Positions 385 through 48,063 of a stretch of 64,000 nucleotides of DNA are shown here, piece by piece (position 1 is the first letter of the stretch; every line of letters starts with the position of its first letter). A program made the position numbers and the translations under genes. The stretch is taken from positions 1 through 64,000 of the IMG/VR virus record IMGVR_UViG_3300034117_001294; one strand, 5' to 3'. The notes under the pieces are model-generated. The model did not search any database. It was not told the DNA's origin and saw only the letters and a program-made list of their open reading frames with translations.

Positions 385-390
385 TAAATA
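385..390 (+). promoter_or_regulatory. T4-like late promoter core TAAATA (first of more than 20 copies in window)
   Basis: TAAATA 6 nt before ATG 397; same motif at 5037, 6244, 6624, 11719, 12077, 12570 (full TATAAATA 12568-12575), 14632, 19052, 21147, 29090, 31226, 31452, 36550, 43128, 47805, 60739, and on - strand at 4988, 10667, 11292, 11635, 17110, 19014, 35156, 43116. Confidence 0.7.
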
Positions 391-396
391 CACATT

Positions 397-1539
397 ATGA
401 CAGCAATAACATTTCCAACAACTGCCACAGTGGGCCAAAGTTATGTGGCTACCAACGCGGTAACCTATGTATGGACCGGCAATCGTTGGTCTTCTAGTCA
501 GGCAATCACTAACAATCAAGCAAAATACTATGTAGAAGGTGGCGATTCATCTTTTTCATATAACGAAAACCTTGATGGTTTGTTAGACGGTGGCTTTTCC
601 GACGGTGGAATGGGAGTTTTGTTAACTATAGTATCATCTTTCTTAACCATAGGCGGCTACGGTAATAACGACGGAACTGTTACATACAATATTGACAGCA
701 CTGGGGCAACGGCAGCAGGCATTATTATTAATGGAATAACTGTAAATCATACACAGACAATTACCGGAACTTTTGCCCAAGGCAACAACACAGTAAGTTG
801 GAGTGGCTACGATATAGATAATCCACTATGGGGACAGATGGCATCTGTCACAGCCTATGTTGTGGACAGCAATGGCTATACATTCTACGCACTAGTTGAA
901 GACCTGTGGGATATTCCATATGGTCCATGTCTAATAGCAGGCACAATGATGTCCTTGGCCAACGGCACACAAAAGAAAATTGAAGACATTACCTATGATG
1001 ATGTATTAACAGTATGGAACTTTGATCTCGGTGAACTATCAGAAGCACGACCACTATGGGTCAAGCGTAAGCAAACATCATCAGCATATACTTTATTAAA
1101 GTTCAGCGACGGTACAGAATTACGTACTGTTGGACATCACATATTCAACAAACAAGCAGGCCAGTTTACCAAGATTATCACAGATGACACACCAGTGGGC
1201 ACAGTCACAGTCAACGAGCAAGGTCAAGAGATTACCATAGTCAGCAAAGAACTGGTAAAAGATGTTGTGGACTATTACAACATTTGGACACAGTATCACT
1301 TGAATGCCTATGCCAACGGAGTATTAACTGGTAACAGATACTGTAACATCTACCCTGTGGTAGATATGAAGTATGTAAAGGATGATAGAGCACTGCGTTC
1401 TGTAGAAGAATTTGCGGGCATTGACAGCAAGTATATCTCGGGTATGAGATTACAAGAACAGGTATTCGATCTAGCGTTTATACAAACAATGGTAGATAGA
1501 ATAGAAACATTAGACAGCCATGCTGTCACAACAGCATAA
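397..1539 (+). CDS. Tail-fibre-like virion protein with C-terminal Hint (intein-like) domain
   Basis: N-terminal FP...G..Y...N..TY.W.G.RW module; Hint motifs CLIAGTMMSLANG (928) and YYNIWTQYHLNAYANGVLTGN (to 1335). Confidence 0.7.
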   Translation: MTAITFPTTATVGQSYVATNAVTYVWTGNRWSSSQAITNNQAKYYVEGGDSSFSYNENLDGLLDGGFSDGGMGVLLTIVSSFLTIGGYGNNDGTVTYNIDSTGATAAGIIINGITVNHTQTITGTFAQGNNTVSWSGYDIDNPLWGQMASVTAYVVDSNGYTFYALVEDLWDIPYGPCLIAGTMMSLANGTQKKIEDITYDDVLTVWNFDLGELSEARPLWVKRKQTSSAYTLLKFSDGTELRTVGHHIFNKQAGQFTKIITDDTPVGTVTVNEQGQEITIVSKELVKDVVDYYNIWTQYHLNAYANGVLTGNRYCNIYPVVDMKYVKDDRALRSVEEFAGIDSKYISGMRLQEQVFDLAFIQTMVDRIETLDSHAVTTA

Positions 1540-1552
1540 TCGGAGCAGATAA

Positions 1553-3949
1553 ATGACAACAAGAATCAAACTACGTAGAGATACAGCCGCTAATTGGACT
1601 ACTAACGATCCAGTATTGGCCTTGGGTGAAGCAGGCTATGACACTACCAATAATGAACTGAGAGTAGGTGACGGTACTACGGTATGGAGCGGATTAGAAT
1701 CTATTGGCGGCACTGGTGATAAAATAACAGCAGAGAAAACTTATTCAGACAATTACAATGACGGTAGTGAACACACTTTCGCCTATACCACTGGATCTAT
1801 TGCTGTACAGATGGGGAATGATAACGGACTGTATCTCAATGATCTGTTGTCAAGATGGGTGGAGTATTTTGATGGCAATCTTGCCTTTCCCTATAATTAC
1901 AGCAACATCAACCTAGTGATAAATCCCGGCACTGATGATCTCGCATCAACAGTGACCAATGTAATCTCTAGTGGTAATCCACCATTGTACACCATAACAC
2001 TGGGCACAGCACACCCAGAGCCTATAACAATAGATGACATTGATTTTAATTACACCTACGTTAACACCATTGGGTTGGACATAGTTAACGGTGATGGTGA
2101 AAGTAACAGTTACTTTGGCATGGCTACCGGTGACGATGATATAACTATTCGTTCAGGAAGAGATATTACGTTAGACGCCGCAGACGATGTTTACATATCA
2201 GGAGGCAATGAATTTCAGTTAACACTTGTAAACCAAGATGACATGAGTGCCAGTAGCGGAATTGATATTCGCACAGAGACCACATCAACTGACTACACAT
2301 GGACATTTAGGTTTGATGGCAGTCTAGAACTACCGGAAGGCTTGACTCTGCCAACTAAAAATAACAAGGGCTATGATGTCACTACCAACCTTAACGCACC
2401 AACACTACAGTTAAGCAACGACAGTCAAAACCAAGTTATCGTCACAGGACCAACAGCTACAGAAAACAACACCAATGCTCAACGTATTGTGATCCAAGGC
2501 CAGCGTGGCTACGGCTCAACCAGCACCACAGGTGAAGGCGGCGATGTTTATATCTGGGGAGGAGTTGGCGGTGAAACCAACAGTAACAGTAATGGATGGG
2601 GCCAAGGTGGCGGCAGTGGTGGTGATATTAAACTACGCGGTGGCGAAGGCCTTAACGACACAGGTGGTTATGTTAGGATTGAAGGTGGCAATGTTGCTCA
2701 CTTTAACACTTCTACCACAGGCAATCCTGGATTTGTGGAAATCACCGGCGGTGATGTAGTCATTGAGAATGCCGCAGGCAGTAGTTATGGTGGCGATGTT
2801 AGAATCACAGGCGGTCGTGCTTACACAGCAACCACACAGTCTGGAGTTGTACAGGTAATCACAGGCGGCTACGCCAATGGTGATGTTCTTGGTGCCAATA
2901 CTTGGACGTTTGCTAACGATGGTACTCTAACAGTACCGGGCGATATCCTTGACAGTGAAGGCGTTAGTGTATATATCGACACAGCGGATAGTCAATGGAT
3001 TGTCGACCCAACTAATACGGGCACATACACCGCTGATGGCAGTTTACACAAACCTTTCAAAACTATCGCGTCGGCATTGGCCTATATTGAAGCAAGGATT
3101 GCTGATACTAGTTTAGTAATTGACATAAACGGTTCTATCGTTGATAACCCACAGTTTATTTTCCTAATGAGTTCTATCACAGAGGATGTGGCGTTGACTC
3201 GTGGAAATATTTTTATCCGTAGCGAAACTCCCGATGCTGGCCATGTACCTATTTGGATTGAGGGACATGTTACTATTACTCCGGCAAACACCGGCACAAA
3301 CGCTATAAACGTTAATAGATTTGGCCTATTTAATATTGCCGTACGTACAACCAGTTCGAATCACGGTATCGAGTTAACTGGATCTAATCCAGCAAAACTT
3401 TACCTAGACGATGTATACTGTTATCAAAACGATGCCACCAAGAGTTGTGTTTATGCGGATAACACTGGCACAGGTAGCAGAGTGGAAATGAATGATTGTC
3501 ACATGGCTAGAGCCGGTGGCTCTGTATATCTAATAGATATCCAACGTGGATTTTGTATTATAAACAATCTCGAAACTAACGGTACGGGACAAGTACTTAA
3601 CCAAGCAAACGATTCATTAGGAACTATGCTGAGAAGTTCATTGGATGCCAACACTGGCTCCGTTATTACCCTAAGTGGTTCAGTACAATGGGGTATGGGT
3701 GAAGTTATTCTTAACAACACTGGAGCAGGGGCCGATACTCACGGTGTTACTATGAGTGACTCGGCAACCATGCAGTTTGGTGTGTGTACATTTAACATAC
3801 CAGTTGGAGATGGTTCAAATCGTGCTATCAACGGTACTGGTACAAACACGGTACTGTATGCTGATCCAATATTCCAATATGGTTCAACTAACAAGATATC
3901 AACTGAGATTACATTAGTTCCGTTGACTAAAACGTTTACAGCGGTATAA
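1553..3949 (+). CDS. Tail fibre / receptor-binding protein with Mtd_N-like N-terminus
   Basis: N-terminus RIKLRRDTAANWTTNDPVLALGEAGYDTTNNELRVGDG; Gly-rich middle; beta-helix-like C-terminus. Confidence 0.75.
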   Translation: MTTRIKLRRDTAANWTTNDPVLALGEAGYDTTNNELRVGDGTTVWSGLESIGGTGDKITAEKTYSDNYNDGSEHTFAYTTGSIAVQMGNDNGLYLNDLLSRWVEYFDGNLAFPYNYSNINLVINPGTDDLASTVTNVISSGNPPLYTITLGTAHPEPITIDDIDFNYTYVNTIGLDIVNGDGESNSYFGMATGDDDITIRSGRDITLDAADDVYISGGNEFQLTLVNQDDMSASSGIDIRTETTSTDYTWTFRFDGSLELPEGLTLPTKNNKGYDVTTNLNAPTLQLSNDSQNQVIVTGPTATENNTNAQRIVIQGQRGYGSTSTTGEGGDVYIWGGVGGETNSNSNGWGQGGGSGGDIKLRGGEGLNDTGGYVRIEGGNVAHFNTSTTGNPGFVEITGGDVVIENAAGSSYGGDVRITGGRAYTATTQSGVVQVITGGYANGDVLGANTWTFANDGTLTVPGDILDSEGVSVYIDTADSQWIVDPTNTGTYTADGSLHKPFKTIASALAYIEARIADTSLVIDINGSIVDNPQFIFLMSSITEDVALTRGNIFIRSETPDAGHVPIWIEGHVTITPANTGTNAINVNRFGLFNIAVRTTSSNHGIELTGSNPAKLYLDDVYCYQNDATKSCVYADNTGTGSRVEMNDCHMARAGGSVYLIDIQRGFCIINNLETNGTGQVLNQANDSLGTMLRSSLDANTGSVITLSGSVQWGMGEVILNNTGAGADTHGVTMSDSATMQFGVCTFNIPVGDGSNRAINGTGTNTVLYADPIFQYGSTNKISTEITLVPLTKTFTAV

Positions 3950-4542: not shown

Positions 4543-4982
4543 ATGTAAAATGTATAAACTTTGTTGATGGGGTGTTCTTGTGGAACAGGTGTTAGTTCGT
4601 GTGCTCTAGGGAAATATTGAGCATACTTCGTGGGCCAGTTGGGATTAAGAAAACTACGAGCGATAAAACGATCACAATTTGGTAAAACTTTTGATATCAA
4701 TTGGGCACAAGTTTCTTTATCAAATATAGTTAACCCGCCATCTATGATGACAGTATCCCAATGCTGATCTAGCGTAAACCAATCTCTGGACTGGATTTTA
4801 GGGTCATCATATACTGGATTTACATCCCACGCTTCTGTACACAACGGCAATAGTAACTTAGTGCTACCCAACAGTAATACACGGCCCGTACAATAGTTAG
4901 AAAATACAGAATAATCGTCTTGATTTGGTGCCGCCGGCCACGTTAATCCAGTCCAATATTCTTTATCTGCGTGTATATTCAT
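4527..4982 (-). CDS. Hypothetical protein, possibly degenerate methyltransferase fold
   Basis: 151 aa ORF overlapping the queC-like start; own TAAATA at 4988-4993; VLLLG..., EAWDVNP and TVIIDGG segments. Confidence 0.4.
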   Translation of the reverse strand: MNIHADKEYWTGLTWPAAPNQDDYSVFSNYCTGRVLLLGSTKLLLPLCTEAWDVNPVYDDPKIQSRDWFTLDQHWDTVIIDGGLTIFDKETCAQLISKVLPNCDRFIARSFLNPNWPTKYAQYFPRAHELTPVPQEHPINKVYTFYIWNNR

Positions 4983-5064
4983 GTGAATATTTAACAGCCC
5001 ACAGCCGATTGAGAAATAATTCTGTTTGAGTTAAGGTAAATATAGCTAAACAGGATATTTCACT

Positions 5065-6246
5065 ATGGCTTTAAGTTTTCCACCAGATCCAGAACCGGGC
5101 GACACTTATGTAGCACCTAACGGCTACACCTACACCTGGGACGGCACCAAATGGTACGTCAGCAGCAGCGGCACGAGTGCCGGCGGCACAAGCCCTATTA
5201 CCATTAAAGACGAAGGAGTAGCAGTCAACACACAGACTACTACCATTAACTTTATCGGTGCTGCTATCACAGCAACTACTACTGGTAGCCAAGTTAACAT
5301 CACTGTTTCTGCACAAGAATTAACCACTGCTACAACTAGTACATTGGGCGGAGTTAAGATTGGTTCAGGAATTAATATTACCAGTAGCGGAACTATCAGT
5401 GTTCGTGAAGGACTACAATATTGGACAGAAAGTAAAACTGTAGTAGACAGCAGTCAAACAGCAGTGGTCAGCCTAATTGTAACCGGTACACAGACCAACA
5501 TTGATGCAGTGCTAAAAGCACAGGGATTAGGTGCTGTTGCCAACGATGATGCAGGAAATAAGCGTGGTGAATACGCAGTTGACTGGCAACGAATTAGAAG
5601 TACTACAGATCAAGTAGCCAGTGGTAACTACTCTGTTATCGCGGGTGGCAGCTTTAATCAGGCCACGGGATTACACAGTGTAGTTACTGGAGGTAATAAT
5701 AACACTGCTGATGCAGACTATGCATTGGTATTAGGTGGTGTTAACGGTAATGCTAGAGGCATCAAAGGTGCTGTGATTGTTCCGCATTATGCCACAGGTG
5801 GACAGAGCAATTCAAGTGGCAAAATTCAAACAGGGCATTACCTACTAGGTGGTGATACTGTACTCAGTGCTAGTCCTGTGGATTTGACCACAGACAGTTC
5901 GGGTAACATAGATGCAACTAATCAGATTACTTTAGTTGACAATTCGGCAATTTACTTTTCAGGCACAGTTATTGCAAAAGAACTGTATCCTACAGCAAAT
6001 CCAGAAATTGTAGTTTGGGACCTAAAAGGCACAGTGTATAGAAATACAGGTAACAGCACTACTAACTTACTGTCAATTGTGAACCCAACAATTATTAGTG
6101 GCAATACTTCAACTACTTGGCAACTCAGTGTGTCCACTGAAAACAATATTGGATGCCTACTGGTACAGGTACAAGGCCCTAGCGATAAACAAATTCGTTG
6201 GGTAGCTAAGATAGAAACTATTGAAGTAGCCGACTCAGGGATGTAA
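5065..6246 (+). CDS. Tail fibre-like protein
   Basis: Same N-terminal module as 397 ORF, ATTSTLGGVKIGSG motif, short S-V-x-x-GG-x-x-N beta-roll repeats. Confidence 0.65.
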   Translation: MALSFPPDPEPGDTYVAPNGYTYTWDGTKWYVSSSGTSAGGTSPITIKDEGVAVNTQTTTINFIGAAITATTTGSQVNITVSAQELTTATTSTLGGVKIGSGINITSSGTISVREGLQYWTESKTVVDSSQTAVVSLIVTGTQTNIDAVLKAQGLGAVANDDAGNKRGEYAVDWQRIRSTTDQVASGNYSVIAGGSFNQATGLHSVVTGGNNNTADADYALVLGGVNGNARGIKGAVIVPHYATGGQSNSSGKIQTGHYLLGGDTVLSASPVDLTTDSSGNIDATNQITLVDNSAIYFSGTVIAKELYPTANPEIVVWDLKGTVYRNTGNSTTNLLSIVNPTIISGNTSTTWQLSVSTENNIGCLLVQVQGPSDKQIRWVAKIETIEVADSGM

Positions 6247-6254
6247 ATAACGTT

Positions 6255-6626
6255 ATGGAATTCTTAAAATCTCTAACTAAAAAACCTGTTAAGGAAAGTA
6301 TCAGCTATGAAGATGCTCTGCTAGCACGTTTGGAAAAAGAAGCTGATCGTGCAGCCAACATAGACAAAATTGACACTGTGACTTTAGATGTTCCTTTGTT
6401 AATCCGTGTGTTTGAACTAGTGCGAGAAGATGTAAAAACAGATATGGATCTACATAATCTTGTTGAACGTATGCTCAGTATCAAAGACAAAGGTGTGTTG
6501 ACCATGGACGATTATGAAACTATCAGTTCAGCACAGGCCAGTGCAGATACTGGACAGCAGCCCAAACCTACAGATGAAAATATAGATGTTAGCATGATTC
6601 GTATGCTAGCAGGACTAAAGAAATAA
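6255..6626 (+). CDS. Hypothetical late protein
   Basis: ORF directly after TAAATA; contains TVTLDVPLLIRVFE. Confidence 0.6.
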   Translation: MEFLKSLTKKPVKESISYEDALLARLEKEADRAANIDKIDTVTLDVPLLIRVFELVREDVKTDMDLHNLVERMLSIKDKGVLTMDDYETISSAQASADTGQQPKPTDENIDVSMIRMLAGLKK

Positions 6627-8847: not shown

Positions 8848-8860
8848 GATAAGTAACATT

Positions 8861-9313
8861 ATGAAAAAACTATTATTAACCCTATTATTAGCAGCCGCAG
8901 CAGTACCTGCTCTGGCACAAAAAACACCACAAGGTGTTACCTATGACGCACAGATTCTGCGTATTACTGATGGCGACACAGTTGTTATTGCAGCACCGTT
9001 CCTACCTAAACCACTAAAACCCGAGTTGGCTATTCGTGTGTTTGGTGTAGACACTCCAGAGAAAGGCTTCCGTGCTCAATGTCCTCAAGAAGCACAGCGT
9101 GGAGAAGCAGCCTCTGCATTTACCAAAAATGCCATTGCACAGGCGGCAGCACAAGGCGGCAAGTTCCAAGTTACTATGTATGGTTGGGACAAGTTTGGCG
9201 GTCGTGTGCTAGGAGACATTCTAGTCAACGGACAGAGCCTACGTGCTGCTCTGATCGCCAACGGTTTCGCCCGTGAGTACTACGGCGAAGCTAAACAAAG
9301 CTGGTGCCAGTAA
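8861..9313 (+). CDS. Staphylococcal nuclease (thermonuclease) homolog with signal peptide
   Basis: MKKLLLTLLLAAAAVPALA signal; DGDT, IRVFGVDTPE, DKFGGRVLG, LIANGFA motifs; start reassigned from 8801 to 8861. Confidence 0.85.
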   Translation: MKKLLLTLLLAAAAVPALAQKTPQGVTYDAQILRITDGDTVVIAAPFLPKPLKPELAIRVFGVDTPEKGFRAQCPQEAQRGEAASAFTKNAIAQAAAQGGKFQVTMYGWDKFGGRVLGDILVNGQSLRAALIANGFAREYYGEAKQSWCQ

Positions 9314-9541
9314 TGAGATATTTCCTTGATTGTATGATTGAGGGACTAGCAAGATTTGGTTGTGGAATGGCTGGCCTAGCTTATCCACATGACTATGAAG
9401 AACCCACCTTAGGGCCCGTTGATCGTAACGGTTAGGAGCTTGCTCCAGGCGTCCGGATGAATAAGACTGTACCCCGTCAGTGTACGCTGGAGAAAGTAAC
9501 CAGCAATAATACTTTAATTTTGATTGTGAGATAACTACACT

Positions 9542-10285
9542 ATGTTCACATTAACTAGAAACTCACTGATAGTATTCCAAATACTAGCACATCTTTCATT
9601 CTTTGTACTGCTTTATTACGGCACACTTGCACAATGGGCCATTACCGCAGGACTGTATCTTTTCTTTGCCACTATCGGTGGTACAGTAACTTATCACAGA
9701 TTACTGACTCACAGATCCTTTAAAGCACCCAAGTGGTTTGAATATTTTGGAACCGTTGTGGGATCAATTGGTGGTGGTGGTTCTAGCCTAGGTTGGGTAG
9801 CTGTGCATAGAGAACATCACAAGTTTACTGATCTCGAGAAGGATCCCCACAGTCCCTGGTTTAAAGGTTTCTTTAGAGTACAATTTTTAAGTATGTTTGA
9901 AGTACCTAATATTCGTTACGTACCGGACCTGTTGCGTTCTAAATTTCATATGTGGATGCATCATTACTACTGGCTAGTAAATTTAATTTATATCACAATC
10001 ATCTGCCTAATCGATCCGTTTGCAATTTTCTATGCATACTTTGTTCCTACCTTATTTGTATGGCATGCCGGCAGTTTTACCAATACAGTAAATCATTCTC
10101 TAGGATATCAAAATTTTGACACCGGTGATCGTAGCACTAATAATCTAATCACAGGATATCTAATTGCCGGAGAAGGATGGCACAATAATCATCATTCTCG
10201 TGCTAGCGATCCGCAATTTGGTAAGAAGTGGTGGGAGTTTGATCTAGGTTGGCAAGTAATTAAGCTCGTGAAAAAGGACTCCTAG
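9542..10285 (+). CDS. Delta-9-type fatty acid desaturase
   Basis: His boxes HRLLTHR, HREHH, WHNNHH plus transmembrane segments. Confidence 0.9.
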   Translation: MFTLTRNSLIVFQILAHLSFFVLLYYGTLAQWAITAGLYLFFATIGGTVTYHRLLTHRSFKAPKWFEYFGTVVGSIGGGGSSLGWVAVHREHHKFTDLEKDPHSPWFKGFFRVQFLSMFEVPNIRYVPDLLRSKFHMWMHHYYWLVNLIYITIICLIDPFAIFYAYFVPTLFVWHAGSFTNTVNHSLGYQNFDTGDRSTNNLITGYLIAGEGWHNNHHSRASDPQFGKKWWEFDLGWQVIKLVKKDS

Positions 10286-10710: not shown

Positions 10711-11286
10711 TTATTTTTTAAACTTGTTTACTCTTTCTTTAACAAGTTTAATAACCACATCACTCAGCACAACTTCATAGTGGTTGCAGTCCACCTCCAC
10801 TAGTTCCATATCTTCGTGATGTTTCTGGCTGGCAATAGTTACTACTCCATCATTGGGCTCGTGCATAAAAGGACTTTGCCCCTTGACTGTGACAATGTTA
10901 GTCCAGGGATGTTGTATCTTAATGTTTCTGGCCTGCTTCATAACCCAACTGCTGGGACCGATGTCACGCATCAGTCTGCTGAATGGTAAGAAGTACTGTG
11001 CATAGTCTGCTACTTCAGCACCACCATATGGTGTACTCAGTGTCACAGCACCTTTAACAGCACCGGGCATTGAATTAGCCAAATGTAGGCTGTAAATGCC
11101 GCCTAGACTATGTGCAACAAACACTAGGTCCTTACGGTCCTGAAGTGTTGACTGCATGTCTATTAGGTTATTTTCAAACCCATTGCGACTGTCATAGTTA
11201 ATGTCTAGGCCAGTGCCCAGTTTACTTTTAATATAGTTGAAGCTTTCGCTGGTGGCATTGGCACCGTGTATATACACTAAGTTCAT
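10711..11286 (-). CDS. Alpha/beta hydrolase (lipase/esterase-like)
   Basis: IHGANA oxyanion motif, AHSLGG nucleophile elbow, NDGVV, NHYE. Confidence 0.85.
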   Translation of the reverse strand: MNLVYIHGANATSESFNYIKSKLGTGLDINYDSRNGFENNLIDMQSTLQDRKDLVFVAHSLGGIYSLHLANSMPGAVKGAVTLSTPYGGAEVADYAQYFLPFSRLMRDIGPSSWVMKQARNIKIQHPWTNIVTVKGQSPFMHEPNDGVVTIASQKHHEDMELVEVDCNHYEVVLSDVVIKLVKERVNKFKK

Positions 11287-11297
11287 GCCAATATTTA

Positions 11298-12040: not shown

Positions 12041-12133
12041 TTTTTGGGCATATCAGGCGTTTTTTTTAAATCGGACTAAATAAAATTACAATGCTCCGGA
12101 GCGGGGCTTGGCATTACGATTAAGGAGATTATT

Positions 12134-12517
12134 ATGCCTGGTATTAATAGAATTCACGGTGGAGTTACAGCAGAATTTTTGCTAAGTGCTTACCAACAAA
12201 CTTTCATCAAGATCACTGGTACTAACATTGGTACAGCTGACTCTGTAAACGGTACAACTGGTGCTATCACTGACGGTAACTTTTCTAAGTCCATCCGTGC
12301 TATCCAAACTATCGCTACAACTAGCTACATTGGTCCACGTCACAATGATGGTTTCATCATTATGGTTGACGGTGCTACTGCACAACCAACTGGCCCAGCT
12401 TATGACACAGATGCAACACCAACATTTGCTGAACGTCTAGCAGCAGTGCTAGATGCAGCTACTGGCGTAACAACTACTGTTGCTGTTCCAAGTATGTTAG
12501 CAGCTAACGTATCTTAA
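12134..12517 (+). CDS. Putative abundant virion protein
   Basis: Strong TAAGGAG RBS, late motif at 12077, apparently biased codons (act/gct/ggt), own terminator. Confidence 0.6.
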   Translation: MPGINRIHGGVTAEFLLSAYQQTFIKITGTNIGTADSVNGTTGAITDGNFSKSIRAIQTIATTSYIGPRHNDGFIIMVDGATAQPTGPAYDTDATPTFAERLAAVLDAATGVTTTVAVPSMLAANVS

Positions 12518-12564: not shown

Positions 12565-12596
12565 GACTATAAATATCTACATAAAGTAGGTACATA

Positions 12597-13019
12597 ATGC
12601 AAGTAATTGAAATAAAAACTCTAATCGATATCACAGATACAGGAGTACGCAGACCTAGTCAAGGAACACAGCAACAGCTTGATCAATTTAAAAATTGGAT
12701 CACATTAAAACAGTGTGTGGAACTACGCAGTGTGGTAGAGTATGATTATGCCCCCACTGTTGACAGTGTGGACATCAAGGGACTAGGGTTTGGCAGAGTA
12801 TATAAAGGCAAGCATTCTGTATGGACATGGAGACTACGCCCGGACCGTGACGGCATTTATGCAGATTCAACTGGACCAATTAGCAGCTTGCTTGGTGATA
12901 TTGATCAGGTTCCGATTATTCAAAAGTTAACTGAAACTATAAATATAGACAAGCCGGTTTTTGATTTAACAGATCCGGAGTTTAAAAATACAACTATCAA
13001 ATTGCTAGGTAGTGATTAA
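12597..13019 (+). CDS. Hypothetical protein
   Basis: ORF after TATAAATA. Confidence 0.6.
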   Translation: MQVIEIKTLIDITDTGVRRPSQGTQQQLDQFKNWITLKQCVELRSVVEYDYAPTVDSVDIKGLGFGRVYKGKHSVWTWRLRPDRDGIYADSTGPISSLLGDIDQVPIIQKLTETINIDKPVFDLTDPEFKNTTIKLLGSD

Positions 13020-14634: not shown

Positions 14635-14663
14635 ATAATAGATATAACTTTTTTGGAAATGCC

Positions 14664-17102: not shown

Positions 17103-17162
17103 TGGCAAATATTTATAGTCCTTTATTTGCGTTATGATAAAAACTTTAGTATAATTATTACT

Positions 17163-31410: not shown

Positions 31411-31462
31411 GATTGTAATACAACTGTAATCTTTTAAACATAATACTACGATAAATATTGCT

Positions 31463-33755: not shown

Positions 33756-33770
33756 ATGTTATAATATTTT

Positions 33771-34477: not shown

Positions 34478-35151
34478 TTAGGTACAGTATATTTTGTTAG
34501 TGTTTCTTCGGAAACACTAAAATTATGTTTGTAATGTGCTATCCTAAATTTTTGTTTAACGCTGAGATGCACTATTGCAACCGGATATAATCTGTCAACC
34601 AGTGGATGTCCTAATAGATATTTTTCTATAGATGCTACTAGACAGTCAGTGGGATGTACTATTTTATGTAGTAGCCAATAAGTTCTGTTTTCTTCACCGG
34701 AGTTAGTTTCGTGTGAATTAATGAGGCGGCATAAAGGAAGATAAGCAGTTATCTTAACACTCATAAAAATATCAAATACATTTAAACTTTCTCCAATCAT
34801 CACACCCAATGTTAATAATGCAACTGCACCAGTGTTCCTACTTTCGGGTATAGAATTATCAGTTGGCAGCGTTCCGGCTAGCATTAGAAATCCAAACTGA
34901 CTAGAGTTCGGAAACGAATAGATAGAAAATGAAATTAAAACATTAGTAGATAAATCTTCAACAGCCAAGACACGGTATTCTGAATTTTTATCTAACAACA
35001 TGTCTATAAGTATCCTTTCGAAATCCTCGTCAGATTTGATATTTTTAAGAGAACCTTGTATATGTGATTTGGATCGATAGATAGATAAAATACTTTCGCA
35101 GTCCAAAAGAGAACATTGAAAAGCTCGAAAGTTACCATATACTAGTTCCAT
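34429..35151 (-). CDS. Hypothetical AT-rich antisense insert
   Basis: 240 aa; own TAAATA 4 nt upstream. Confidence 0.5.
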   Translation of the reverse strand: MELVYGNFRAFQCSLLDCESILSIYRSKSHIQGSLKNIKSDEDFERILIDMLLDKNSEYRVLAVEDLSTNVLISFSIYSFPNSSQFGFLMLAGTLPTDNSIPESRNTGAVALLTLGVMIGESLNVFDIFMSVKITAYLPLCRLINSHETNSGEENRTYWLLHKIVHPTDCLVASIEKYLLGHPLVDRLYPVAIVHLSVKQKFRIAHYKHNFSVSEETLTKYTVPNYACSTSTTTSPGTSS

Positions 35152-35232
35152 AATAATATTTACTGTTTGGTAAAATCAATGGTTGCACTATTGGTTATAC
35201 CGAGTGTATACTATGTCTATAGGAGGTTCATA

Positions 35233-36549: not shown

Positions 36550-36561
36550 TAAATATCTCTT

Positions 36562-37950
36562 ATGAAACCAACATTAAATGAAAAATTTCTCGCCTACCTA
36601 GCATTACTAAGCGGTATAACTCTTTCGATTGTAGCAGAGTACTACAGTATTCTCGGCCTGACTGCAATTTTCTCAGCCGCAGTTATCCCTGTTGTTATAA
36701 TGGGTATTGCTTTAGGCATAGGAAAAGTCACTGCTACATTATGGCTAAAACAAAATTGGAACATTGCACCCTGGAGTATTCGAACTTACTTGCTGGCTGC
36801 AATCGCAGTATTGATGCTGATCACATCAATGGGTATTTTTGGATTCTTATCTAAAGCACACTCAGATCAAAGCCTAGTATCGGGTGATGTACAAAGCAAG
36901 ATTGCTATCTATGACGAAAAGATTAAAACAGCCAAGGACAATATAGATGCGAACCGTAAGGCTCTTAAACAGATGGATGAGGCTGTGGACCAAGTCATGG
37001 CAAGAAGCAGTTCAGAAACGGGTGCCGACAAAGCTGTTGGGATTAGACGCTCACAACAAAAAGAACGTGCCCGCCTTCAGTCTGAGATCCAAGCCGAACA
37101 GAAAACTGTTGCCGCTATTAGCCAAGAACGTGCTCCAATCGCGGCAGAGGTACGAAAGGTTGAAGCCGAAGTAGGGCCAATCAAATACATTGCGGCATTT
37201 GTCTATGGCGAAACAGATGAAACAATTTTAGAAAAAGCAGTTACCTGGGTAATTGTTATTTTAATCATAGTGTTTGATCCGCTGGCTGTTATTTTATTAT
37301 TATCCAGCCAAATTAGCTTTCAAAAATTCCGTGAATATGAAGAAGGTGATTTCTTATTACACAATACAGTTCCTGCGTTTGTTGCAGATGTCAGTGAACC
37401 GCCTACTAAAGAAAAAATCAAGGACGACCTGTTTCCGACATTTGAAGAAATTACGGAGGGTGACAGCCCACCAGGACCGGTTGTTGACATAGTCTCCCCA
37501 GAATCCACTGTCACAACATCTATACTAGAACAACATCCTTATCTTAATAATGGCTTTACACATTTTGAAGGCTTAGAGCCTATGGTGTATACACCCGAGC
37601 CAGTGGTTGAAAAGCCAAAAGAATATGTTGTAGAGGCTGCATTAATTGATGCACTAGAAGGCACAGTTAATCGACTGCAACAAGAAAACGACGACTTAAA
37701 AAATCAGTTAGAAGACTTGCAAAAGGCAGACTTTGAAGCTAAACTATCTAATGCACAGAAAACTGAAATACAAAGTTTGTATAGCAAAATACATCAATTA
37801 GAAACTAAGCTAACAGGATCTAGTGAATATGTGCAGAACGAAGAACAATCTAAAAGTGGATTGTGGAGAGCTATTAATTCGAAGATCAGTGAAGAAGAAT
37901 ACATAGACAAAATACGTAAGCAGAATGATAACACTGATAACGCCGCCTGA
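36562..37950 (+). CDS. Membrane-anchored coiled-coil protein
   Basis: 3 N-terminal TM helices, long coiled coil, internal TM FDPLAV. Confidence 0.7.
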   Translation: MKPTLNEKFLAYLALLSGITLSIVAEYYSILGLTAIFSAAVIPVVIMGIALGIGKVTATLWLKQNWNIAPWSIRTYLLAAIAVLMLITSMGIFGFLSKAHSDQSLVSGDVQSKIAIYDEKIKTAKDNIDANRKALKQMDEAVDQVMARSSSETGADKAVGIRRSQQKERARLQSEIQAEQKTVAAISQERAPIAAEVRKVEAEVGPIKYIAAFVYGETDETILEKAVTWVIVILIIVFDPLAVILLLSSQISFQKFREYEEGDFLLHNTVPAFVADVSEPPTKEKIKDDLFPTFEEITEGDSPPGPVVDIVSPESTVTTSILEQHPYLNNGFTHFEGLEPMVYTPEPVVEKPKEYVVEAALIDALEGTVNRLQQENDDLKNQLEDLQKADFEAKLSNAQKTEIQSLYSKIHQLETKLTGSSEYVQNEEQSKSGLWRAINSKISEEEYIDKIRKQNDNTDNAA

Positions 37951-39533: not shown

Positions 39534-39747
39534 TAAAGGTCTTAGTGTTGAAGTTAAGGATGACAATGTTAACGTTGCCCTTAGAAAATTCAAAAAGAAA
39601 GTAGAAGACTCTGGAAAACTAATTGATGTAGTTAAACGTCAACACTTTGAAAAACCCACCACTGAGAAGAAACGTAAAAAAGGAGCCGCTCGAGCTCGCT
39701 GGCTTAAAAAGCTCAGAGATGAAAGTCTTCCTAAAAAAATGTATTGA
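39517..39747 (+). CDS. rpsU: 30S ribosomal protein bS21
   Basis: VEVKDDNVNVALRKFKKKV...RQHFEKPTTEKKRKK.AA.AR. Confidence 0.88.
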   Translation: MKRNNNKGLSVEVKDDNVNVALRKFKKKVEDSGKLIDVVKRQHFEKPTTEKKRKKGAARARWLKKLRDESLPKKMY

Positions 39748-39772
39748 CACCTTCGTTATTATCTGCTACAAT
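39744..39772 (+). promoter_or_regulatory. sigma70 promoter (ATG only 6 nt downstream)
   Basis: TTGACA-17-TACAAT. Confidence 0.75.
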
Positions 39773-39778
39773 ATATAC

Positions 39779-40015
39779 ATGAGCAAAAAACTTGAAATCA
39801 AATTTGCCCCTGGATGTTTTGATAACTTCTCAGGATCCCAAGATGAGCTCGACGAGCTGATGGCCGAAATCCAAAAAATGGCAGAAACCGGAGAGCTTTT
39901 CGAACAATCGAAACCTTTAGATATTGATGAACTGATTGACGAGGATCCAGAATTTGCAGAAGCACTTCTGCGTCAGATCAACGATGTTCCGTCAGAACCA
40001 AGAAAGTTACAATAA
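39779..40015 (+). CDS. Acidic hypothetical protein
   Basis: MSKKLEIKFAPGCFD; start reassigned. Confidence 0.6.
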   Translation: MSKKLEIKFAPGCFDNFSGSQDELDELMAEIQKMAETGELFEQSKPLDIDELIDEDPEFAEALLRQINDVPSEPRKLQ

Positions 40016-41917: not shown

Positions 41918-43107
41918 AATATTTCCTTTAAACTTCGTGTTAGATAATCAATGTCTGCTTCTGTGTGATTAGGAGTTGGAGTTGCACGAAGTCGTTCTGC
42001 ACCCCAAGGTACCGTTGGATAGTTGATGGGCTGAAGATATATAGCACGTTCTTCTAATAGCCAGTCACTGATATGTTTGCATTTTCTAGCATCGCGAATC
42101 ATAATAGGAACAATGTGCGTATCACCTGGCATCACGTCGATATCGTTTGACAATAAATGTTCTTTAGTTTGTTGTGCTACATTAAAAATTCGTGTTCTAA
42201 GTTCAGGATGATCTGCAACGTACTTAACACTGGCCAATGCCCCGGCACATAGTACCGGGCTCATGGATGTGCTAAAGATAAAGCCTTGTGCATAACTGCG
42301 TACCATATCAATTAAGTCACGCCCGGCGGCAATATAGCCTCCTTGAACTCCGTAGGCTTTGGCCAGTGTTCCTTGAAACACGTCAACACCTTCTACGCAT
42401 CTCTGCTCTTCGGCAACTCCGGCACCGCGACTGCCATATAGTCCTACAGCATGTACTTCGTCAACATAAACCATTGCACCGTATAATCGAGCAATATCAC
42501 AAACATCACTAATCAGTCCTTTATCTCCGTCCATAGAATATACACCTTCCATTGTAATGATAGGTTGTGCGTCAATAGACATAGTCTGTAGTATTTCTTT
42601 TAAGTGTGCAAGATCATTGTGTCGCCAAACTGTAACAGGTGCTTGACTGCTTTTCATTCCTACAATCATACTGTTATGATTATTACTATCACTAATGTAA
42701 TGTGCTCCGGGTATCATGCGACCCATAACACTCAATGCAGCTTGATTGGCCACATATCCGCTAGTGAACAATAACGCACTGGTCTTGTCATGCAGCTTGG
42801 CTAACTCCCATTCAAGTGCTACATGATAATGTGTAGTTCCTGAAATGTTTCGTGTGCCTCCCGAACCTGCACCTGCTGTATCTAATGCTGTGTGCATTGC
42901 GTCCAATACTACTTTGTGCTGGCCCATGCCCAAGTAGTCATTTGAGCACCAGTTGGTTATGTGTTTGATATTGTATTTGCCATAGTAAACCGCTTTCGGA
43001 AATTCTCCTCGTTCACGAAGGATATCAGTGAATACTCGATAATTTCCTTCAGTCTTGAGTTTTTCCAAACTCTGTCCTATAGCGTCTTGTGTTTTTGGCT
43101 TTATCAT
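41914..43107 (-). CDS. hemA: 5-aminolevulinate synthase (Shemin/C4 pathway)
   Basis: WCSNDYLGM, GAGSGGTRNISGT, FTSGYVAN, VYSMDGD, DEVHAVGLYG, GTLAKAYG, FIFSTS, INYPTV. Confidence 0.9.
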   Translation of the reverse strand: MIKPKTQDAIGQSLEKLKTEGNYRVFTDILRERGEFPKAVYYGKYNIKHITNWCSNDYLGMGQHKVVLDAMHTALDTAGAGSGGTRNISGTTHYHVALEWELAKLHDKTSALLFTSGYVANQAALSVMGRMIPGAHYISDSNNHNSMIVGMKSSQAPVTVWRHNDLAHLKEILQTMSIDAQPIITMEGVYSMDGDKGLISDVCDIARLYGAMVYVDEVHAVGLYGSRGAGVAEEQRCVEGVDVFQGTLAKAYGVQGGYIAAGRDLIDMVRSYAQGFIFSTSMSPVLCAGALASVKYVADHPELRTRIFNVAQQTKEHLLSNDIDVMPGDTHIVPIMIRDARKCKHISDWLLEERAIYLQPINYPTVPWGAERLRATPTPNHTEADIDYLTRSLKEIL

Positions 43108-43148
43108 AATGTTAGTATTTAACCATATAAATATTCAAAAGGTAAGCA

Positions 43149-44177
43149 ATGGCTAAAACAACTGAAATTGAATTTGACGGTAAAGACATAGTGCTGTTAG
43201 ACGACGATTTAAACTACACTACGCATACAGTAGAATCTGTATTAAGTAAAGATCTGTCATTTTGGAAGGGCTGGCATTGTGCAATTGGCCTTCGATCGCT
43301 CTATATTGATTATGAAGGAAATGTAGTACGAGGAACCTGCAGGGAAGGTGGGGTAGTTGCTAACGTATACAAGAAATCCATTCCGTTAGACATTGCAATA
43401 GGTAATAAATGGACAGTTTGCGGAAAGCAGATATGTTCTTGCGGTGCAGATATGGCTGTGCCTAAGGTAAAGCATCAAGAAAGCATACTGAGATTTTTTG
43501 ATTCTAATAAAATTAGAGAATTCGATCTTAACTACAAATTGCCCAAAGTAGACGCAGAAGTTGTATATTCAACCAACTACAATTATAAAACCATAACATG
43601 GGCCATAGGCCGTAGATGTAACTTTGACTGCTGGTATTGTCCAGAAAGCGATCACAATAACTTTGAAGCACACAAAGATTACGACACTTTGATGTCTGCT
43701 TACAATATATTATCAACTCAATGGATCAAAGGTGAACCTACTAAGTTCAGTATGCTAGGCGGAGAACTGACTGTATATAAAGACTATCTGCCATTTGTTA
43801 AAACCTTAAGAAAAGACGGTCATGGATCTATCACTACAACAAACGGTAGTAGAGATGCTGCCTATTATGCAGAGCTGGCACAGGTTAGCGATCTATGCTT
43901 TAGTTTACATTTGAATTACTTAAAAACTTTAGGGATTGAAAAGTTTGTAAAAAGTATAGATGCTGCTATTCGAAATAAGGCTGAGAATTTTATTCGAATC
44001 CGCTTAATGGTAGACCCGGGTAATTTGGAATATGCTAAAGAAGTACACGAAATACTATTAGAAAAGTTTAATGGTCGTTGCCTAATCGCTATCAAACCTG
44101 TCCATGACACACAAGGTAAATTATTTCCATACGAGCCAAAAGAGATCATTTGGATACAAAACCCTATTGACAAATAG
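43149..44177 (+). CDS. Radical SAM protein with N-terminal Cys-rich SPASM/twitch-like domain
   Basis: CNFDCWYC and MLGGE in C-terminal half; GWHCAIG..IDYEGNV..C..C....CSC in N-terminal half. Confidence 0.75.
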   Translation: MAKTTEIEFDGKDIVLLDDDLNYTTHTVESVLSKDLSFWKGWHCAIGLRSLYIDYEGNVVRGTCREGGVVANVYKKSIPLDIAIGNKWTVCGKQICSCGADMAVPKVKHQESILRFFDSNKIREFDLNYKLPKVDAEVVYSTNYNYKTITWAIGRRCNFDCWYCPESDHNNFEAHKDYDTLMSAYNILSTQWIKGEPTKFSMLGGELTVYKDYLPFVKTLRKDGHGSITTTNGSRDAAYYAELAQVSDLCFSLHLNYLKTLGIEKFVKSIDAAIRNKAENFIRIRLMVDPGNLEYAKEVHEILLEKFNGRCLIAIKPVHDTQGKLFPYEPKEIIWIQNPIDK

Positions 44178-47521: not shown

Positions 47522-47585
47522 TGGAGTTGACAAAATTAAAAAAATTTGTTAAAGTATTAGATAAACATACAGAAAGAATTTTATC

Positions 47586-47804
47586 ATGACTATGGATCAA
47601 GCAGCGACCTGGTTAGCAGGCAGTATTTTAACAATGTTAGGTTTTATTGTAGTAATTGGTGCAGTATTGGTAATCAACAATCTACTGCATAAGTATTGGA
47701 AACCAGTGCAATTCTTTAAATGGGCAGAACATCCTTCTACTCGTTTTATGACGGAAGAAGAAACTACAAAGATTGCACCAGTAATAGACCAACAGAATAA
47801 ATGA
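47586..47804 (+). CDS. Small membrane protein
   Basis: One TM helix. Confidence 0.55.
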   Translation: MTMDQAATWLAGSILTMLGFIVVIGAVLVINNLLHKYWKPVQFFKWAEHPSTRFMTEEETTKIAPVIDQQNK

Positions 47805-47814
47805 TAAATACTTG

Positions 47815-48063
47815 ATGCAGATTTCCGAATTGCTTTTTGAACTAGACTTTCAGGGTAGCCCCTGCACTAAAGATTGTAGTGGGCACAGTGCTGGATATGC
47901 ATGGTCCATGAAACACGCTAACAAAAATTGCGATTCAAAAAACGCCAGCTTTAACAATGGCTGCAACATTGCAAAAAAGCAGATTGCCAGCAAGAATATT
48001 AAAAAGCCAGTGGTGTCACAAACTACAAAACCTAGTGATCAGCCTGCAGAGGAGCCAGTATGA
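47815..48063 (+). CDS. Small Cys-containing late protein
   Basis: MQISELLFE; CTKDCSGHSAGYAW; TAAATA 4 nt upstream. Confidence 0.55.
   Translation: MQISELLFELDFQGSPCTKDCSGHSAGYAWSMKHANKNCDSKNASFNNGCNIAKKQIASKNIKKPVVSQTTKPSDQPAEEPV

What the first reader, a model, noticed from the sequence alone, without database searches (positions are those of the whole stretch)
385..47815. Late promoter TAAATA sits 4-8 nt before ATG: a class of leaderless late mRNAs
Seen: at least 13 genes have TAAATA (or the TAAGTA/TAACTA variants) ending 4-8 nt before the start codon, with no Shine-Dalgarno in the gap. These are 397, 4982(-), 6255, 8861, 9542, 11286(-), 17102(-), 19005(-), 31463, 35151(-), 36562, 43107(-) and 47815. 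Other late genes (12134, 19080, 60823) have longer SD-led leaders. Two sigma70 promoters (33760, 39767) also end 5-6 nt before ATG. Established: T4 gp55 recognises TATAAATA and initiates a few nt downstream. Inference: many lone accessory genes (ALAS, desaturase, PlcP, QueC-like) are plug-in units made of a 6-bp promoter plus ATG, needing no RBS.
Basis: partly seen in the sequence, partly recalled or inferred. Interest (0 to 1): 0.6.

Follow-up and report, generated by a model that had tools for sequence, protein, structure and literature searches.

The report
Phage promoters fused directly to start codons
In this uncultured jumbo phage and its many relatives, a six-base T4-type late promoter core (TAAATA) sits 4-6 bases before the ATG of about one gene in fourteen, so those messages most likely begin at the start codon and need no ribosome-binding site; no transcript start has been mapped.

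Summary
The window is the first 64 kb of a 229-kb fragment of an uncultured jumbo phage of about 350 kb. TAAATA is the commonest hexamer ending 4-8 nt before called starts: 21 genes against 2.4±1.6 in shuffles. Yet it is the rarest of the 15 A4T2 hexamers genome-wide. Without gene calls, TAAATA-N4/5-ATG occurs 24 times and 20 of these open long ORFs. T4, PA5oct and EJP2 show no such peak.

A related 353-kb genome repeats the pattern. The arrangement is kept across two gene families down to about 50% protein identity.

Several facts point to a promoter rather than a translation signal. The same hexamer lies 15-60 nt upstream of SD-led genes and 6-8 nt before four tRNA genes. It lies between strong terminators and ATGs, and at the head of 12 of 16 minus-strand gene runs. 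Both near-complete relatives encode a gp55-like late sigma; this fragment lacks that region.

Sigma70-type promoters fused to ATG show a sharp 6-nt gap. Both geometries place +1 on the A of ATG.

Not shown: transcript starts and late timing. The TAAGTA and TAACTA variants and "QueC-like" are unsupported. The "accessory plug-in" idea is only partly right.

The parts
385..399 (+). TAAATA (385-390), 6-nt gap, ATG 397. A 380-aa gene that leads into the tail-fibre gene 1553-3949.
4980..4993 (-). TAAATA (4988-4993), 5-nt gap, ATG 4982. Head of a minus-strand gene run, divergent from 5065(+).
6244..6257 (+). TAAATA (6244-6249), 5-nt gap, ATG 6255. Its TAA is the stop codon of gene 5065-6246.
11284..11297 (-). 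TAAATA (11292-11297), 5-nt gap, ATG 11286. Alpha/beta hydrolase; the Pfam match starts at residue 4.
17100..17115 (-). TAAATA (17110-17115, part of TATAAATA), 7-nt gap, ATG 17102. A 182-aa ORF, divergent from 17163(+).
19003..19019 (-). TAAATA (19014-19019), 8 nt before ATG 19005 or 2 nt before ATG 19011. Weak ORF; doubtful member.
31452..31465 (+). TAAATA (31452-31457), 5-nt gap, ATG 31463. Metallophosphoesterase; the domain starts at residue 7.
35149..35162 (-). TAAATA (35157-35162), 5-nt gap, ATG 35151. A 240-aa protein of unknown function at the head of a minus-strand run.
36550..36564 (+). TAAATA (36550-36555), 6-nt gap, ATG 36562. A 462-aa conserved gene; the arrangement is kept in about 53 of 62 distinct orthologous loci.
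43105..43121 (-). TAAATA (43116-43121), 8-nt gap, ATG 43107. 5-aminolevulinate synthase (TIGR01821, 533 bits).
47805..47817 (+). TAAATA (47805-47810), 4-nt gap, ATG 47815. An 82-aa ORF; the G002 orthologue has the identical TAAATActtgATG.
8850..8863 (+). TAAGTA variant, 5-nt gap, ATG 8861 (SNase-like). Not supported as a member of the class.
9532..9544 (+). TAACTA variant, 4-nt gap, ATG 9542 (fatty-acid desaturase). Not supported as a member of the class.
5037..5067 (+). Same TAAATA with a 22-nt gap holding AGGA, then ATG 5065. SD-led class.
12077..12136 (+). TAAATA with a 51-nt gap holding AAGGAG, then ATG 12134. SD-led class.
12570..12599 (+). TATAAATA/TAAATA with a 21-nt gap, then ATG 12597. 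SD-led class.
14632..14666 (+). TAAATA with a 26-nt gap, then ATG 14664. Virion structural protein (phrog_14154).
19052..19082 (+). TAAATA with a 22-nt gap holding AGGAA, then ATG 19080. Tail-spike-like protein (Mtd_N plus pectate-lyase fold).
43128..43151 (+). TATAAATA/TAAATA with a 15-nt gap, then ATG 43149. Back to back with the minus-strand site at 43116-43121.
60739..60825 (+). TAAATA, then a long leader with AAGGAG, then ATG 60823 (HSP20).
39744..39781 (+). Sigma70-type promoter TTGACA-N17-TACAAT, 6-nt gap, ATG 39779 (78-aa ORF). This geometry puts +1 on the A of ATG.
33757..33773 (+). Extended -10 (TGTTATAAT), 5-nt gap, ATG 33771, directly after an intrinsic terminator.
17150..17165 (+). 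TATAAT, 7-nt gap, ATG 17163. The G002 orthologue has TTGACA-N18-TAAAAT-N6-ATG.
53232..53301 (+). Contrast case: sigma70-type promoter with a 38-nt SD-bearing leader before rIIA (ATG 53299).

Best explanation
TAAATA is the conserved six-base core (-11 to -6) of a T4-type late promoter. It is read by host RNA polymerase carrying a phage gp55-like sigma. It has no -35 element, and the two upstream bases of T4's TATAAATA are free here.

The phage uses it in two layouts. In the ordinary layout, also T4's, it lies 15-60 nt before the ATG and the short leader carries an AGGA/GGAG Shine-Dalgarno. In the second layout it lies 4-6 nt (rarely 7-8) before the ATG. Transcription beginning about 6 nt past the hexamer then starts on the A of ATG or 1-3 nt before it. 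The message is leaderless and must be translated by direct recognition of a 5'-terminal AUG, without an SD.

Shown:
- The motif, its spacing and its enrichment.
- Its conservation in relatives.
- Its use before tRNA genes and after terminators.
- The presence of gp55 in complete relatives.

Inferred:
- The exact transcript start.
- Late timing.
- The translation mode.

One likely consequence, also inferred: read-through transcripts from upstream promoters carry these ORFs without an SD. Translation of these genes would then be tied to firing of their own promoter.
For: 1. Enrichment and avoidance. 21 genes observed against 2.4 expected. TAAATA is the top hexamer before starts yet the rarest A4T2 hexamer, at about half its Markov expectation. 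65 of 139 copies lie in the 5.6% of the record that is intergenic, and 50 of those point at a same-strand start within 60 nt.

2. The same strict hexamer serves two spacing classes. Both avoid G just downstream. One-mismatch variants are not enriched.

3. Replication in G002 (353 kb, 99% complete). The spacing is bimodal at 4-5 and 15-30 nt. The T4 control, run with the same caller, gives 13-34 nt only.

4. Conservation. About 53 of 62 distinct loci of the 462-aa family keep the arrangement, as do most PDF orthologues down to 52% identity, while the gap letters and the upstream gene vary.

5. Contexts where translation cannot be the reason.
- TAAATA lies 6-8 nt before four tRNA genes in two genomes.
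- Strong terminators end 12-14 nt before the ATG with only TAAATA in between, at G000 104489 and G002 66366, 298862 and 303671.
- 12 of 16 minus-strand gene runs start with TAAATA, and none starts with a sigma70-like promoter.

6. Geometry. The T4 element spans -13 to -6 (PMC2988020), so a 5-nt gap puts +1 on the A. Independently, strict sigma70-type promoters fused to ATG show a sharp 6-nt gap: 7 in G002 and 2 in G000, with none at 7-16 nt. That is the canonical +1 distance for a -10 hexamer.

7. A gp55-like sigma is present in both near-complete relatives (E 1e-24 and 1e-25; 34% identity to the T4 core). It is found in more than 596 IMG/VR contigs. No Sigma70_r2 domain or T7-type RNA polymerase was found.

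8. Organisation like T4. Sigma70-like promoters are 30 of 31 on one strand, while TAAATA sites are on both (PMC2988020). Homologues of T4 terminase, sheath, portal, protease and capsid genes all have TAAATA as their nearest upstream promoter.

9. All 43 short-class starts in the two genomes are ATG.
Against: - No transcript 5' end was mapped. The only RNA run held short contigs of relatives.
- The window's own record has no gp55 gene. Its presence in this phage is inferred from synteny with G002.
- A T4-type clamp (phrog_223) was not found even in the complete relatives. gp33 was not searched.
- A 4-nt gap is one base shorter than T4 geometry predicts. Gaps of 7-8 nt imply 2-3-nt leaders.
- TAAATA is also the nearest promoter for some replication-gene homologues in G002, so 'late only' is not established.
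- TAAATA and an SD replace one another at the same position in some orthologue pairs, which a translation signal would also explain.
- The host, and hence its ability to translate leaderless mRNA, is unknown.
Confidence: 0.72

Rival explanations
1. TAAATA is an mRNA element that replaces the Shine-Dalgarno sequence, such as an A/U-rich ribosome or S1 landing site. The genes would be translated from ordinary longer transcripts.
For: It occupies the place an SD would occupy. In orthologue pairs TAAATA and AAGGA/GAGGA swap at the same position: 184622 against G002 203024, 84652 against G002 116380, and the distant PDF orthologues.
Against: - The same hexamer stands 15-60 nt upstream of genes that have their own SD.
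- It lies 6-8 nt before four tRNA genes.
- It lies directly after strong terminators.
- It is strict to the base, and one-mismatch variants are not enriched. That fits protein-DNA recognition, not general A/U richness.
- It cannot pair with the anti-SD.
- It is avoided genome-wide on both strands.
- Sigma70 promoters show the matching fused geometry.
Confidence: 0.08
2. TAAATA is a promoter fused to the ATG, but it is not read by gp55 or is not late. A host sigma or an unrecognised phage factor reads it, and the genes may be expressed throughout infection.
For: - No gp55 in the window's own record.
- No T4-type clamp in the relatives.
- TAAATA is the nearest promoter for some replication-gene homologues.
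- It is embedded in the spacer of 6 of 31 sigma70-like promoters.
Against: - gp55-like genes are present in both complete relatives and in hundreds of related contigs.
- No other sigma or single-subunit RNA polymerase was found.
- The hexamer equals the last six bases of the T4 late element, whose first two bases are known to vary in relatives (PMC2988020).
- The strand pattern matches T4's early/late organisation.
- Structural-gene homologues depend on it.
Confidence: 0.13
3. The pattern is a by-product of tight gene packing. TAA is the stop codon of the upstream gene, and the downstream ATG is reached by termination-reinitiation.
For: In many orthologues of the 462-aa and PDF families the TAA of TAAATA is the upstream gene's stop (..CGA TAA ATA..). 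The same holds at 6244 in the window.
Against: - The ATA and the spacing are conserved as well.
- The motif persists where the upstream gene differs.
- Five minus-strand runs begin with it, with no upstream gene on that strand.
- It occurs after terminators and before tRNA genes.
- T4, PA5oct and EJP2, which are equally compact, show no such peak.
Confidence: 0.04
4. The start codons are mis-called. True starts lie downstream with normal SDs, and TAAATA then has an ordinary leader.
For: All gene calls here are my own heuristic. The ORFs at 19005 and 47815 are short or weak.
Against: - In 9 of 13 sites the ATG is the first start of the ORF, and only one site (43107) has even a weak later SD-led candidate, AGGA before a TTG at codon 14.
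- Domain matches begin at residues 2-9.
- Orthologue alignments start at residue 1, and N-termini are conserved (MKPT.., MLxI..PDP).
- The Melnitz cyclase orthologue has the same length.
Confidence: 0.03

Closest known systems
Bacteriophage T4 late promoters (TATAAATA, read by gp55 with gp33 and the gp45 clamp)
   Same: - An A/T-rich -10-type element with no -35. The last six bases are identical.
- A gp55 homologue is encoded in the clade.
- Late-type sites occur on both strands, while sigma70-type promoters keep one polarity.
- The SD-led class has the same 13-34-nt spacing as T4.
   Different: - Only six bases are conserved.
- About 40% of promoter-like sites near a start in G000 (20 of the 50 intergenic copies that point at a start within 60 nt) are fused to the ATG at 4-6 nt, a layout absent from T4.
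- The gp55 homologue is 305 aa, with an insert of about 130 aa.
- No phrog_223 clamp was detected.
Thermus phage phiYS40 leaderless middle/late mRNAs
   Same: A phage in which most middle/late transcripts lack a leader, the promoter -10 element abuts the ORF, and translation must proceed without an SD (review PMC3594737).
   Different: - phiYS40 infects Thermus, where leaderless expression is a common host mode (PMC12340547).
- Its promoters are read by the host sigma, not by a gp55-type factor.
- Here only a subset of genes is leaderless, and the rest use strong SDs.
Deinococcus-Thermus '-10 region adjacent to ORF' expression mode, and single cases such as lambda cI from PRM
   Same: The -10 element is placed so that +1 falls on the A of ATG. 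The sigma70-type sites here (TTGACA-N17-TAnAAT-N6-ATG) are exactly of this kind.
   Different: Those are host or temperate-phage sigma70 promoters. The main class here uses a phage late-type element with a 1-nt shorter modal gap.
Methylophilales phage Melnitz (cultured marine T4-like phage, Kyanoviridae)
   Same: It encodes gp55. It has 3-4 TAAATA-N5-ATG genes, including the orthologue (51% identity) of the cyclase-domain gene at 73478, which is leaderless-class in both phages.
   Different: Only a handful of sites, with no clear genome-wide peak. It belongs to a different phage family, with a genome of 141 kb.

Membership tests
T4-type (gp55-dependent) late promoter | A TATAAATA-like element at the -10 position with no conserved -35 | tested here: met
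   An invariant TAAATA core with no conserved upstream positions in logos of both spacing classes and both genomes. The T4 positions -13/-12 are not conserved, as in Aeh1 according to PMC2988020.
T4-type (gp55-dependent) late promoter | The phage encodes a gp55 late sigma | tested here: inconclusive
   Absent from the window's own 229-kb record, which is about 65% complete. Present in both near-complete relatives, with 34% identity to the T4 gp55 core. The gene lies in the G002 region that has no counterpart in this fragment.
T4-type (gp55-dependent) late promoter | A gp45-type sliding clamp and the gp33 co-activator | tested here: inconclusive
   phrog_223 was not found in G000, G001 or G002. 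Only one clamp family was searched, and gp33 was not searched.
T4-type (gp55-dependent) late promoter | Transcription starts about 6 nt downstream of the element | not testable with these tools
   Only contigs of one metatranscriptome run were on hand. The geometry is inferred from the ATG, tRNA and terminator spacing.
T4-type (gp55-dependent) late promoter | Drives late (structural) genes; either polarity, while early promoters keep one polarity | tested here: met
   The polarity pattern is met. Homologues of tail fibre, tail spike, virion protein, terminase, sheath, portal and capsid genes lie behind TAAATA. Timing itself was not measured.
Leaderless mRNA | The 5' end lies at or within a few nt of the start codon | not testable with these tools
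   Inferred from promoter-to-ATG gaps of 4-6 nt for TAAATA and exactly 6 nt for sigma70 -10 hexamers.
Leaderless mRNA | No Shine-Dalgarno sequence before the start | tested here: met
   The gap of 4-8 nt holds no GGAG/AGGA. SD hexamers are otherwise the commonest upstream words.
Leaderless mRNA | An AUG start codon (GUG and UUG are poorly used without a leader) | tested here: met
   21 of 21 short-class genes in G000 and all 22 in G002 start with ATG, against 81% of all called starts.

The most novel reading that the evidence does not exclude
A widespread clade of uncultured jumbo phages (more than 590 contigs in IMG/VR) has fused promoter to start codon as a regular expression mode, for both late (gp55-type) and early (sigma70-type) genes. 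Because these ORFs have no SD, only transcripts that begin at their own promoter can be translated. Promoter choice would then gate translation as well as transcription. The 14-base unit TAAATA-N5-ATG could travel with a gene between gp55-encoding phages; the cyclase gene shared with Melnitz is a possible example. The phage-encoded ribosomal protein bS21, which lies next to one such promoter, may help tune host ribosomes towards SD-independent initiation.
Probability: 0.3. Interest if true: 0.75.

Novelty: new variant of a known kind. Interest (0 to 1): 0.6.

Why it matters
- T4-type late transcription is a textbook system, and its promoters have always been described with SD-bearing leaders. 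A large environmental clade that fuses the same element to the start codon would show that gp55-type promoters can deliver leaderless messages.
- Leaderless translation would then be used systematically by phages of hosts that also use strong SDs. It would not be confined to Thermus, actinobacterial or archaeal systems.
- Gene finders that demand an RBS, and promoter scans that demand TATAAATA plus a leader, will mis-start or miss these genes.
- A 14-base promoter-plus-start unit is a very compact expression cassette.
- The finding gives a simple, testable rule (TAAATA-N4/5-ATG; TAnAAT-N6-ATG) for annotating hundreds of uncultured jumbo-phage genomes.

Tried and rejected
- RNA evidence. One metatranscriptome run held 9% of the words of 31000-38000. 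Laid on 31150-37149, it gave 18 short contigs at 90-99% identity, from relatives, with no start or strand information. This is no support either way.
- Close cultured relatives. There is no nucleotide match in the phage collection, and the 543-aa tail-spike-like protein at 19080-20711 has no protein match either. The rIIA protein matches at best 29% (PA5oct).
- Full TATAAATA. Only 4 copies in the window, no more than chance. The eight-base T4 consensus is the wrong search word here.
- gp55, an alternative late-sigma PHROG and the gp45 clamp were not found in the own record. The clamp was not found in the complete relatives either.
- Cultured long-gp55 jumbo phages show no excess of TAAATA-N5-ATG: PA5oct 15 against 12 in the control, EJP2 3 against 13. 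The layout is therefore not a general trait of that sigma type.
- Class conservation between G000 and G002 by reciprocal best hits was thin: only 5 short-class pairs, 2 conserved, plus 47815 found by hand. The gene-family approach was more informative.
- The 'nearest upstream promoter' test for lateness is biased by the scarcity of strict sigma70 matches. I treat it as consistent, not as proof.
- Literature. No open paper links leaderless mRNA with T4-type late promoters. The primary phiYS40 paper could not be opened, so I cite a review.
- The big protein searches, structure prediction and complex prediction were not used, because the question did not need them. No other genetic code was used.

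Full report
**What the window is**

The window is the first 64 kb of a single 228,849-bp IMG/VR virus record. The record is linear and CheckV rates it about 65% complete. GC content is about 41%.

It encodes rIIA, NrdA, NAMPT and tail-fibre proteins and a T4-type DNA polymerase. It carries 39 tRNA genes. It has no close cultured relative.

Related contigs of 349 and 353 kb exist (G001 at 97% and G002 at 99% complete). The phage is therefore an uncultured jumbo phage of about 350 kb.

All 13 listed sites are present. Eleven carry exact TAAATA, with gaps of 4-8 nt to an ATG that opens a long ORF.

I called 289 genes in the record with a dicodon model. The results:
- The distance from TAAATA to the first start codon peaks at 5 nt (11 genes), 4 nt (5) and 6 nt (3). 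The background is about one per position.
- TAAATA is the commonest of all 4096 hexamers ending 4-8 nt before starts (21 genes), ahead of every Shine-Dalgarno word.
- It is also the rarest of the 15 A4T2 permutations (139 copies against 169-495) and at about half its Markov expectation.
- Dinucleotide shuffles of the upstream regions give 2.4±1.6, with a maximum of 9 in 500.
- Without any gene calls, TAAATA-Nk-ATG has 9 and 15 sites at k=4 and 5, and 20 of these open ORFs of at least 80 codons. Other k values give 0-3.
- Exact TAAATA is 57-fold enriched at gaps of 4-7 nt. One-mismatch variants are not enriched.

The claimed TAAGTA (8861) and TAACTA (9542) sites are therefore unsupported. Their G002 orthologues carry no such motif.

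**Are the start codons right?**

- In 9 of the 13 sites the ATG is the first start of the ORF. Only one site (43107) has any later start candidate with an SD-like match, a weak AGGA before a TTG at codon 14.
- Domain matches begin almost at the first residue: PDF at residue 2, SDR at 3, alpha/beta hydrolase at 4, metallophosphoesterase at 7 and ALAS at 9.
- Orthologue alignments start at residue 1 with conserved N-termini.
- The cyclase-domain protein (684 aa) matches its Melnitz orthologue (683 aa) in length.
- The minus-strand ORF at 17102 does not overlap its neighbour once that gene is started at ATG 17163.
- The ORF at 19005 remains doubtful.

**Promoter or translation signal?**

Several lines favour a promoter.

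1. 65 of the 139 TAAATA copies lie in the 5.6% of the record that is intergenic. Of those, 50 point at a same-strand start within 60 nt: 20 at 9 nt or less and 30 at 10-60 nt. Most of the latter have AGGA or GGAG in between. Both classes share the strict hexamer and avoid G just after it.
2. Strong intrinsic terminators end 12-14 nt before the ATG with only TAAATA in between. This occurs at 104489 in this genome and at 66366, 298862 and 303671 in G002.
3. TAAATA lies 7-8 nt before tRNA-Gly (94082) and tRNA-Thr (126430). In G002 it lies 8 and 6 nt before tRNA-Ser and tRNA-Arg, with none at 9-39 nt.
4. 12 of the 16 minus-strand gene runs begin with TAAATA (5 fused to the ATG, 7 with a leader). 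None begins with a sigma70-like promoter.
5. The T4 control, run with the same gene caller, gives TATAAATA-to-ATG gaps of 13-34 nt and none at 4-8 nt. The fused class is therefore not an artefact of my method.

**Who reads it?**

The T4 late element spans -13 to -6, has no -35, and varies at -13/-12 in relatives (PMC2988020). TAAATA equals its last six bases.

- The own record has no gp55 gene. Both near-complete relatives encode one (E 1e-24 and 1e-25).
- The G002 protein has 305 aa. It aligns with the T4 gp55 N-terminus and core at 34% identity, carries an insert of about 130 aa, and has its own TTGACC-N18-TACAAT promoter.
- The gene lies at 244 kb in G002. That is inside the 235-350-kb stretch that has no counterpart in this fragment.
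- Relatives of this sigma occur in more than 596 IMG/VR contigs at 74-81% identity. Two of them come from the sample that also holds a 100%-identical copy of window genes.
- The long form is shared with PA5oct and Asteriusvirus.
- No Sigma70_r2 domain and no T7-type RNA polymerase were found in G000-G002.
- A T4-type clamp was not detected.

**Geometry**

With the element ending at -6, a 5-nt gap puts +1 on the A of ATG.

An independent internal check comes from sigma70-type promoters. Thirty-one TTGAC-N17-20-TAnAAT promoters exist in the record, 30 of them on the plus strand, and most have 17-60-nt leaders; rIIA is one example. For the 30 with an N17-19 spacer (85 in G002), I measured the gap from the -10 hexamer to the first long-ORF ATG. 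It is bimodal: exactly 6 nt for 7 promoters in G002 and 2 here (39779 and 164849), with nothing at 7-16 nt. Six nt is the canonical distance that puts +1 on the A.

The window has three such sites:
- 39744-39779.
- 33760-33771, directly after a terminator.
- 17150-17163, whose G002 orthologue has TTGACA-N18-TAAAAT-N6-ATG.

The 1-nt shorter modal gap for TAAATA matches the 1-nt difference between the two element positions.

**Conservation**

- The 462-aa gene at 36562 has more than 590 relatives. In about 53 of 62 distinct loci (50-100% protein identity) TAAATA lies 4-9 nt before the ATG. The gap letters and the upstream gene vary. Often the TAA is the stop codon of the upstream gene.
- The PDF gene (175204) keeps TAAATA-N4/5-ATG in most orthologues down to 52% identity. 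More distant orthologues (about 44%) have GAGGA instead.
- G002 repeats the genome-wide pattern: 19 genes against 4.7±2.0, with bimodal gaps.
- PA5oct and EJP2 show no excess. Melnitz has 3-4 sites.

**Which genes?**

The fused class includes ALAS (TIGR01821, 533 bits), a metallophosphoesterase, an alpha/beta hydrolase, a desaturase (110312), a radical-SAM protein, an SDR-like protein, PDF, the cyclase-domain protein and many proteins of unknown function.

Only 4 of 21 have a reciprocal best hit in G002, against 126 of 268 other genes (p=0.02). An accessory bias is therefore real.

The class also includes core genes. Examples are the 462-aa family, operon leaders such as 397, which precedes the tail-fibre gene, and in G002 the large terminase. 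No motif gene is QueC-like.

**Timing**

'Late' rests on analogy:
- The element and the sigma are of the T4 late type.
- The strand pattern matches T4.
- Genes for tail fibre, tail spike and a virion protein, and homologues of T4 terminase, sheath, portal and capsid genes, lie behind TAAATA.

Some replication-gene homologues do so too, so exclusivity is not shown.

**Known parallels**

- Thermus phage phiYS40 makes most middle/late mRNAs without leaders (PMC3594737).
- Deinococcus-Thermus bacteria place -10 elements next to ORFs (PMC12340547).
- phiKZ early transcripts include no leaderless ones (PMC8244752).
- I found no open paper that joins leaderless mRNA with T4-type late promoters.

I therefore rate this a new variant of a known kind.

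**Limits**

- No transcript start, timing or translation mode was measured.
- The one RNA run gave only contigs of relatives.
- The host is unknown. The ALAS gene is closest to alphaproteobacterial genes, at 47-49% identity.

Noticed in passing
window 39517-39747 (+): The phage encodes ribosomal protein bS21 (TIGR00030 at 49.6 bits, above its cut-off; PF01165). It sits just after a ClpX-like gene (38295-39533), and its 3' end overlaps the sigma70-type promoter fused to ATG 39779. G001 has it in the same neighbourhood. A link to SD-independent initiation is possible but untested.
   Followed up: partly
window 39744-39781, 33757-33773 and 17150-17165; G000 164849; G002 29836, 55422, 143715, 185183(-), 211584(-), 217363(-), 346658(-): Sigma70-type promoters are fused to start codons, with the -10 hexamer ending exactly 6 nt before the ATG. 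No promoters have gaps of 7-16 nt. The fusion at 17163 is conserved in the G002 orthologue.
   Followed up: yes
G000 85558-85760, 92507, 141329, 196581 (outside the window): TAAATA lies inside the 17-bp spacer of 6 of the 31 sigma70-like promoters, where about 0.1 would be expected. Three are tandem copies just upstream of the tRNA array. These may be overlapping early and late promoters.
   Followed up: partly
G000 86566-102398 and 126430-126505: There is an array of 39 tRNA genes, all on the plus strand, with small protein genes of the fused class interspersed on both strands (88809-, 89712-, 90826+, 92400-). TAAATA lies 7-8 nt before tRNA-Gly 94082 and tRNA-Thr 126430, which implies almost leaderless tRNA precursors.
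   Followed up: partly
window 52307-52320 (+): TAAATA-N5-ATG lies in frame inside gene 52108-53199, at codon 71. It could give a 293-aa N-terminally shortened isoform from an internal promoter.
   Followed up: no
G000 68705-75532; Melnitz L011: The cyclase-domain gene (73478) has its closest cultured match in Methylophilales phage Melnitz (51% identity), where it follows a curli-like CsgG/curlin/FecR cluster. Pelagibacter phage HTVC008M also has a homologue. Both the G000 and the Melnitz copies carry TAAATA-N4/5-ATG. Whether G000 shares the curli-like cluster was not checked.
   Followed up: partly
window 43105-43151: Two TAAATA elements lie back to back in the 41-bp space between ALAS (minus strand, 8-nt gap) and gene 43149 (plus strand, 15-nt gap with an SD). 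This is a compact divergent promoter pair.
   Followed up: no
L092 1006-1923 (G002); L211 (PA5oct); L212 (EJP2): The clade's gp55 homologue has 305 aa against 185 aa in T4. It carries an insert of about 130 aa between the N-terminal segment and the sigma-2-like core. This long form is shared with PA5oct, Asteriusvirus, Erwinia phage Hallingskeid and Sinorhizobium phage Phosso.
   Followed up: partly
G000 216256-228768 (-): A 4170-aa ORF runs almost to the end of the record. ORFs of 2161 aa (144791) and 1602 aa (179542) are also present.
   Followed up: no
window 9542-10285, 41914-43107, 50590-52029, 60823-61254; G000 110312(-), 175204: The phage carries a rich set of host-like metabolic genes: two fatty-acid desaturases, 5-aminolevulinate synthase, NAMPT, HSP20 and peptide deformylase. 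The ALAS gene is closest to alphaproteobacterial genes (Xanthobacteraceae, 49%), which is a weak hint at the host.
   Followed up: partly
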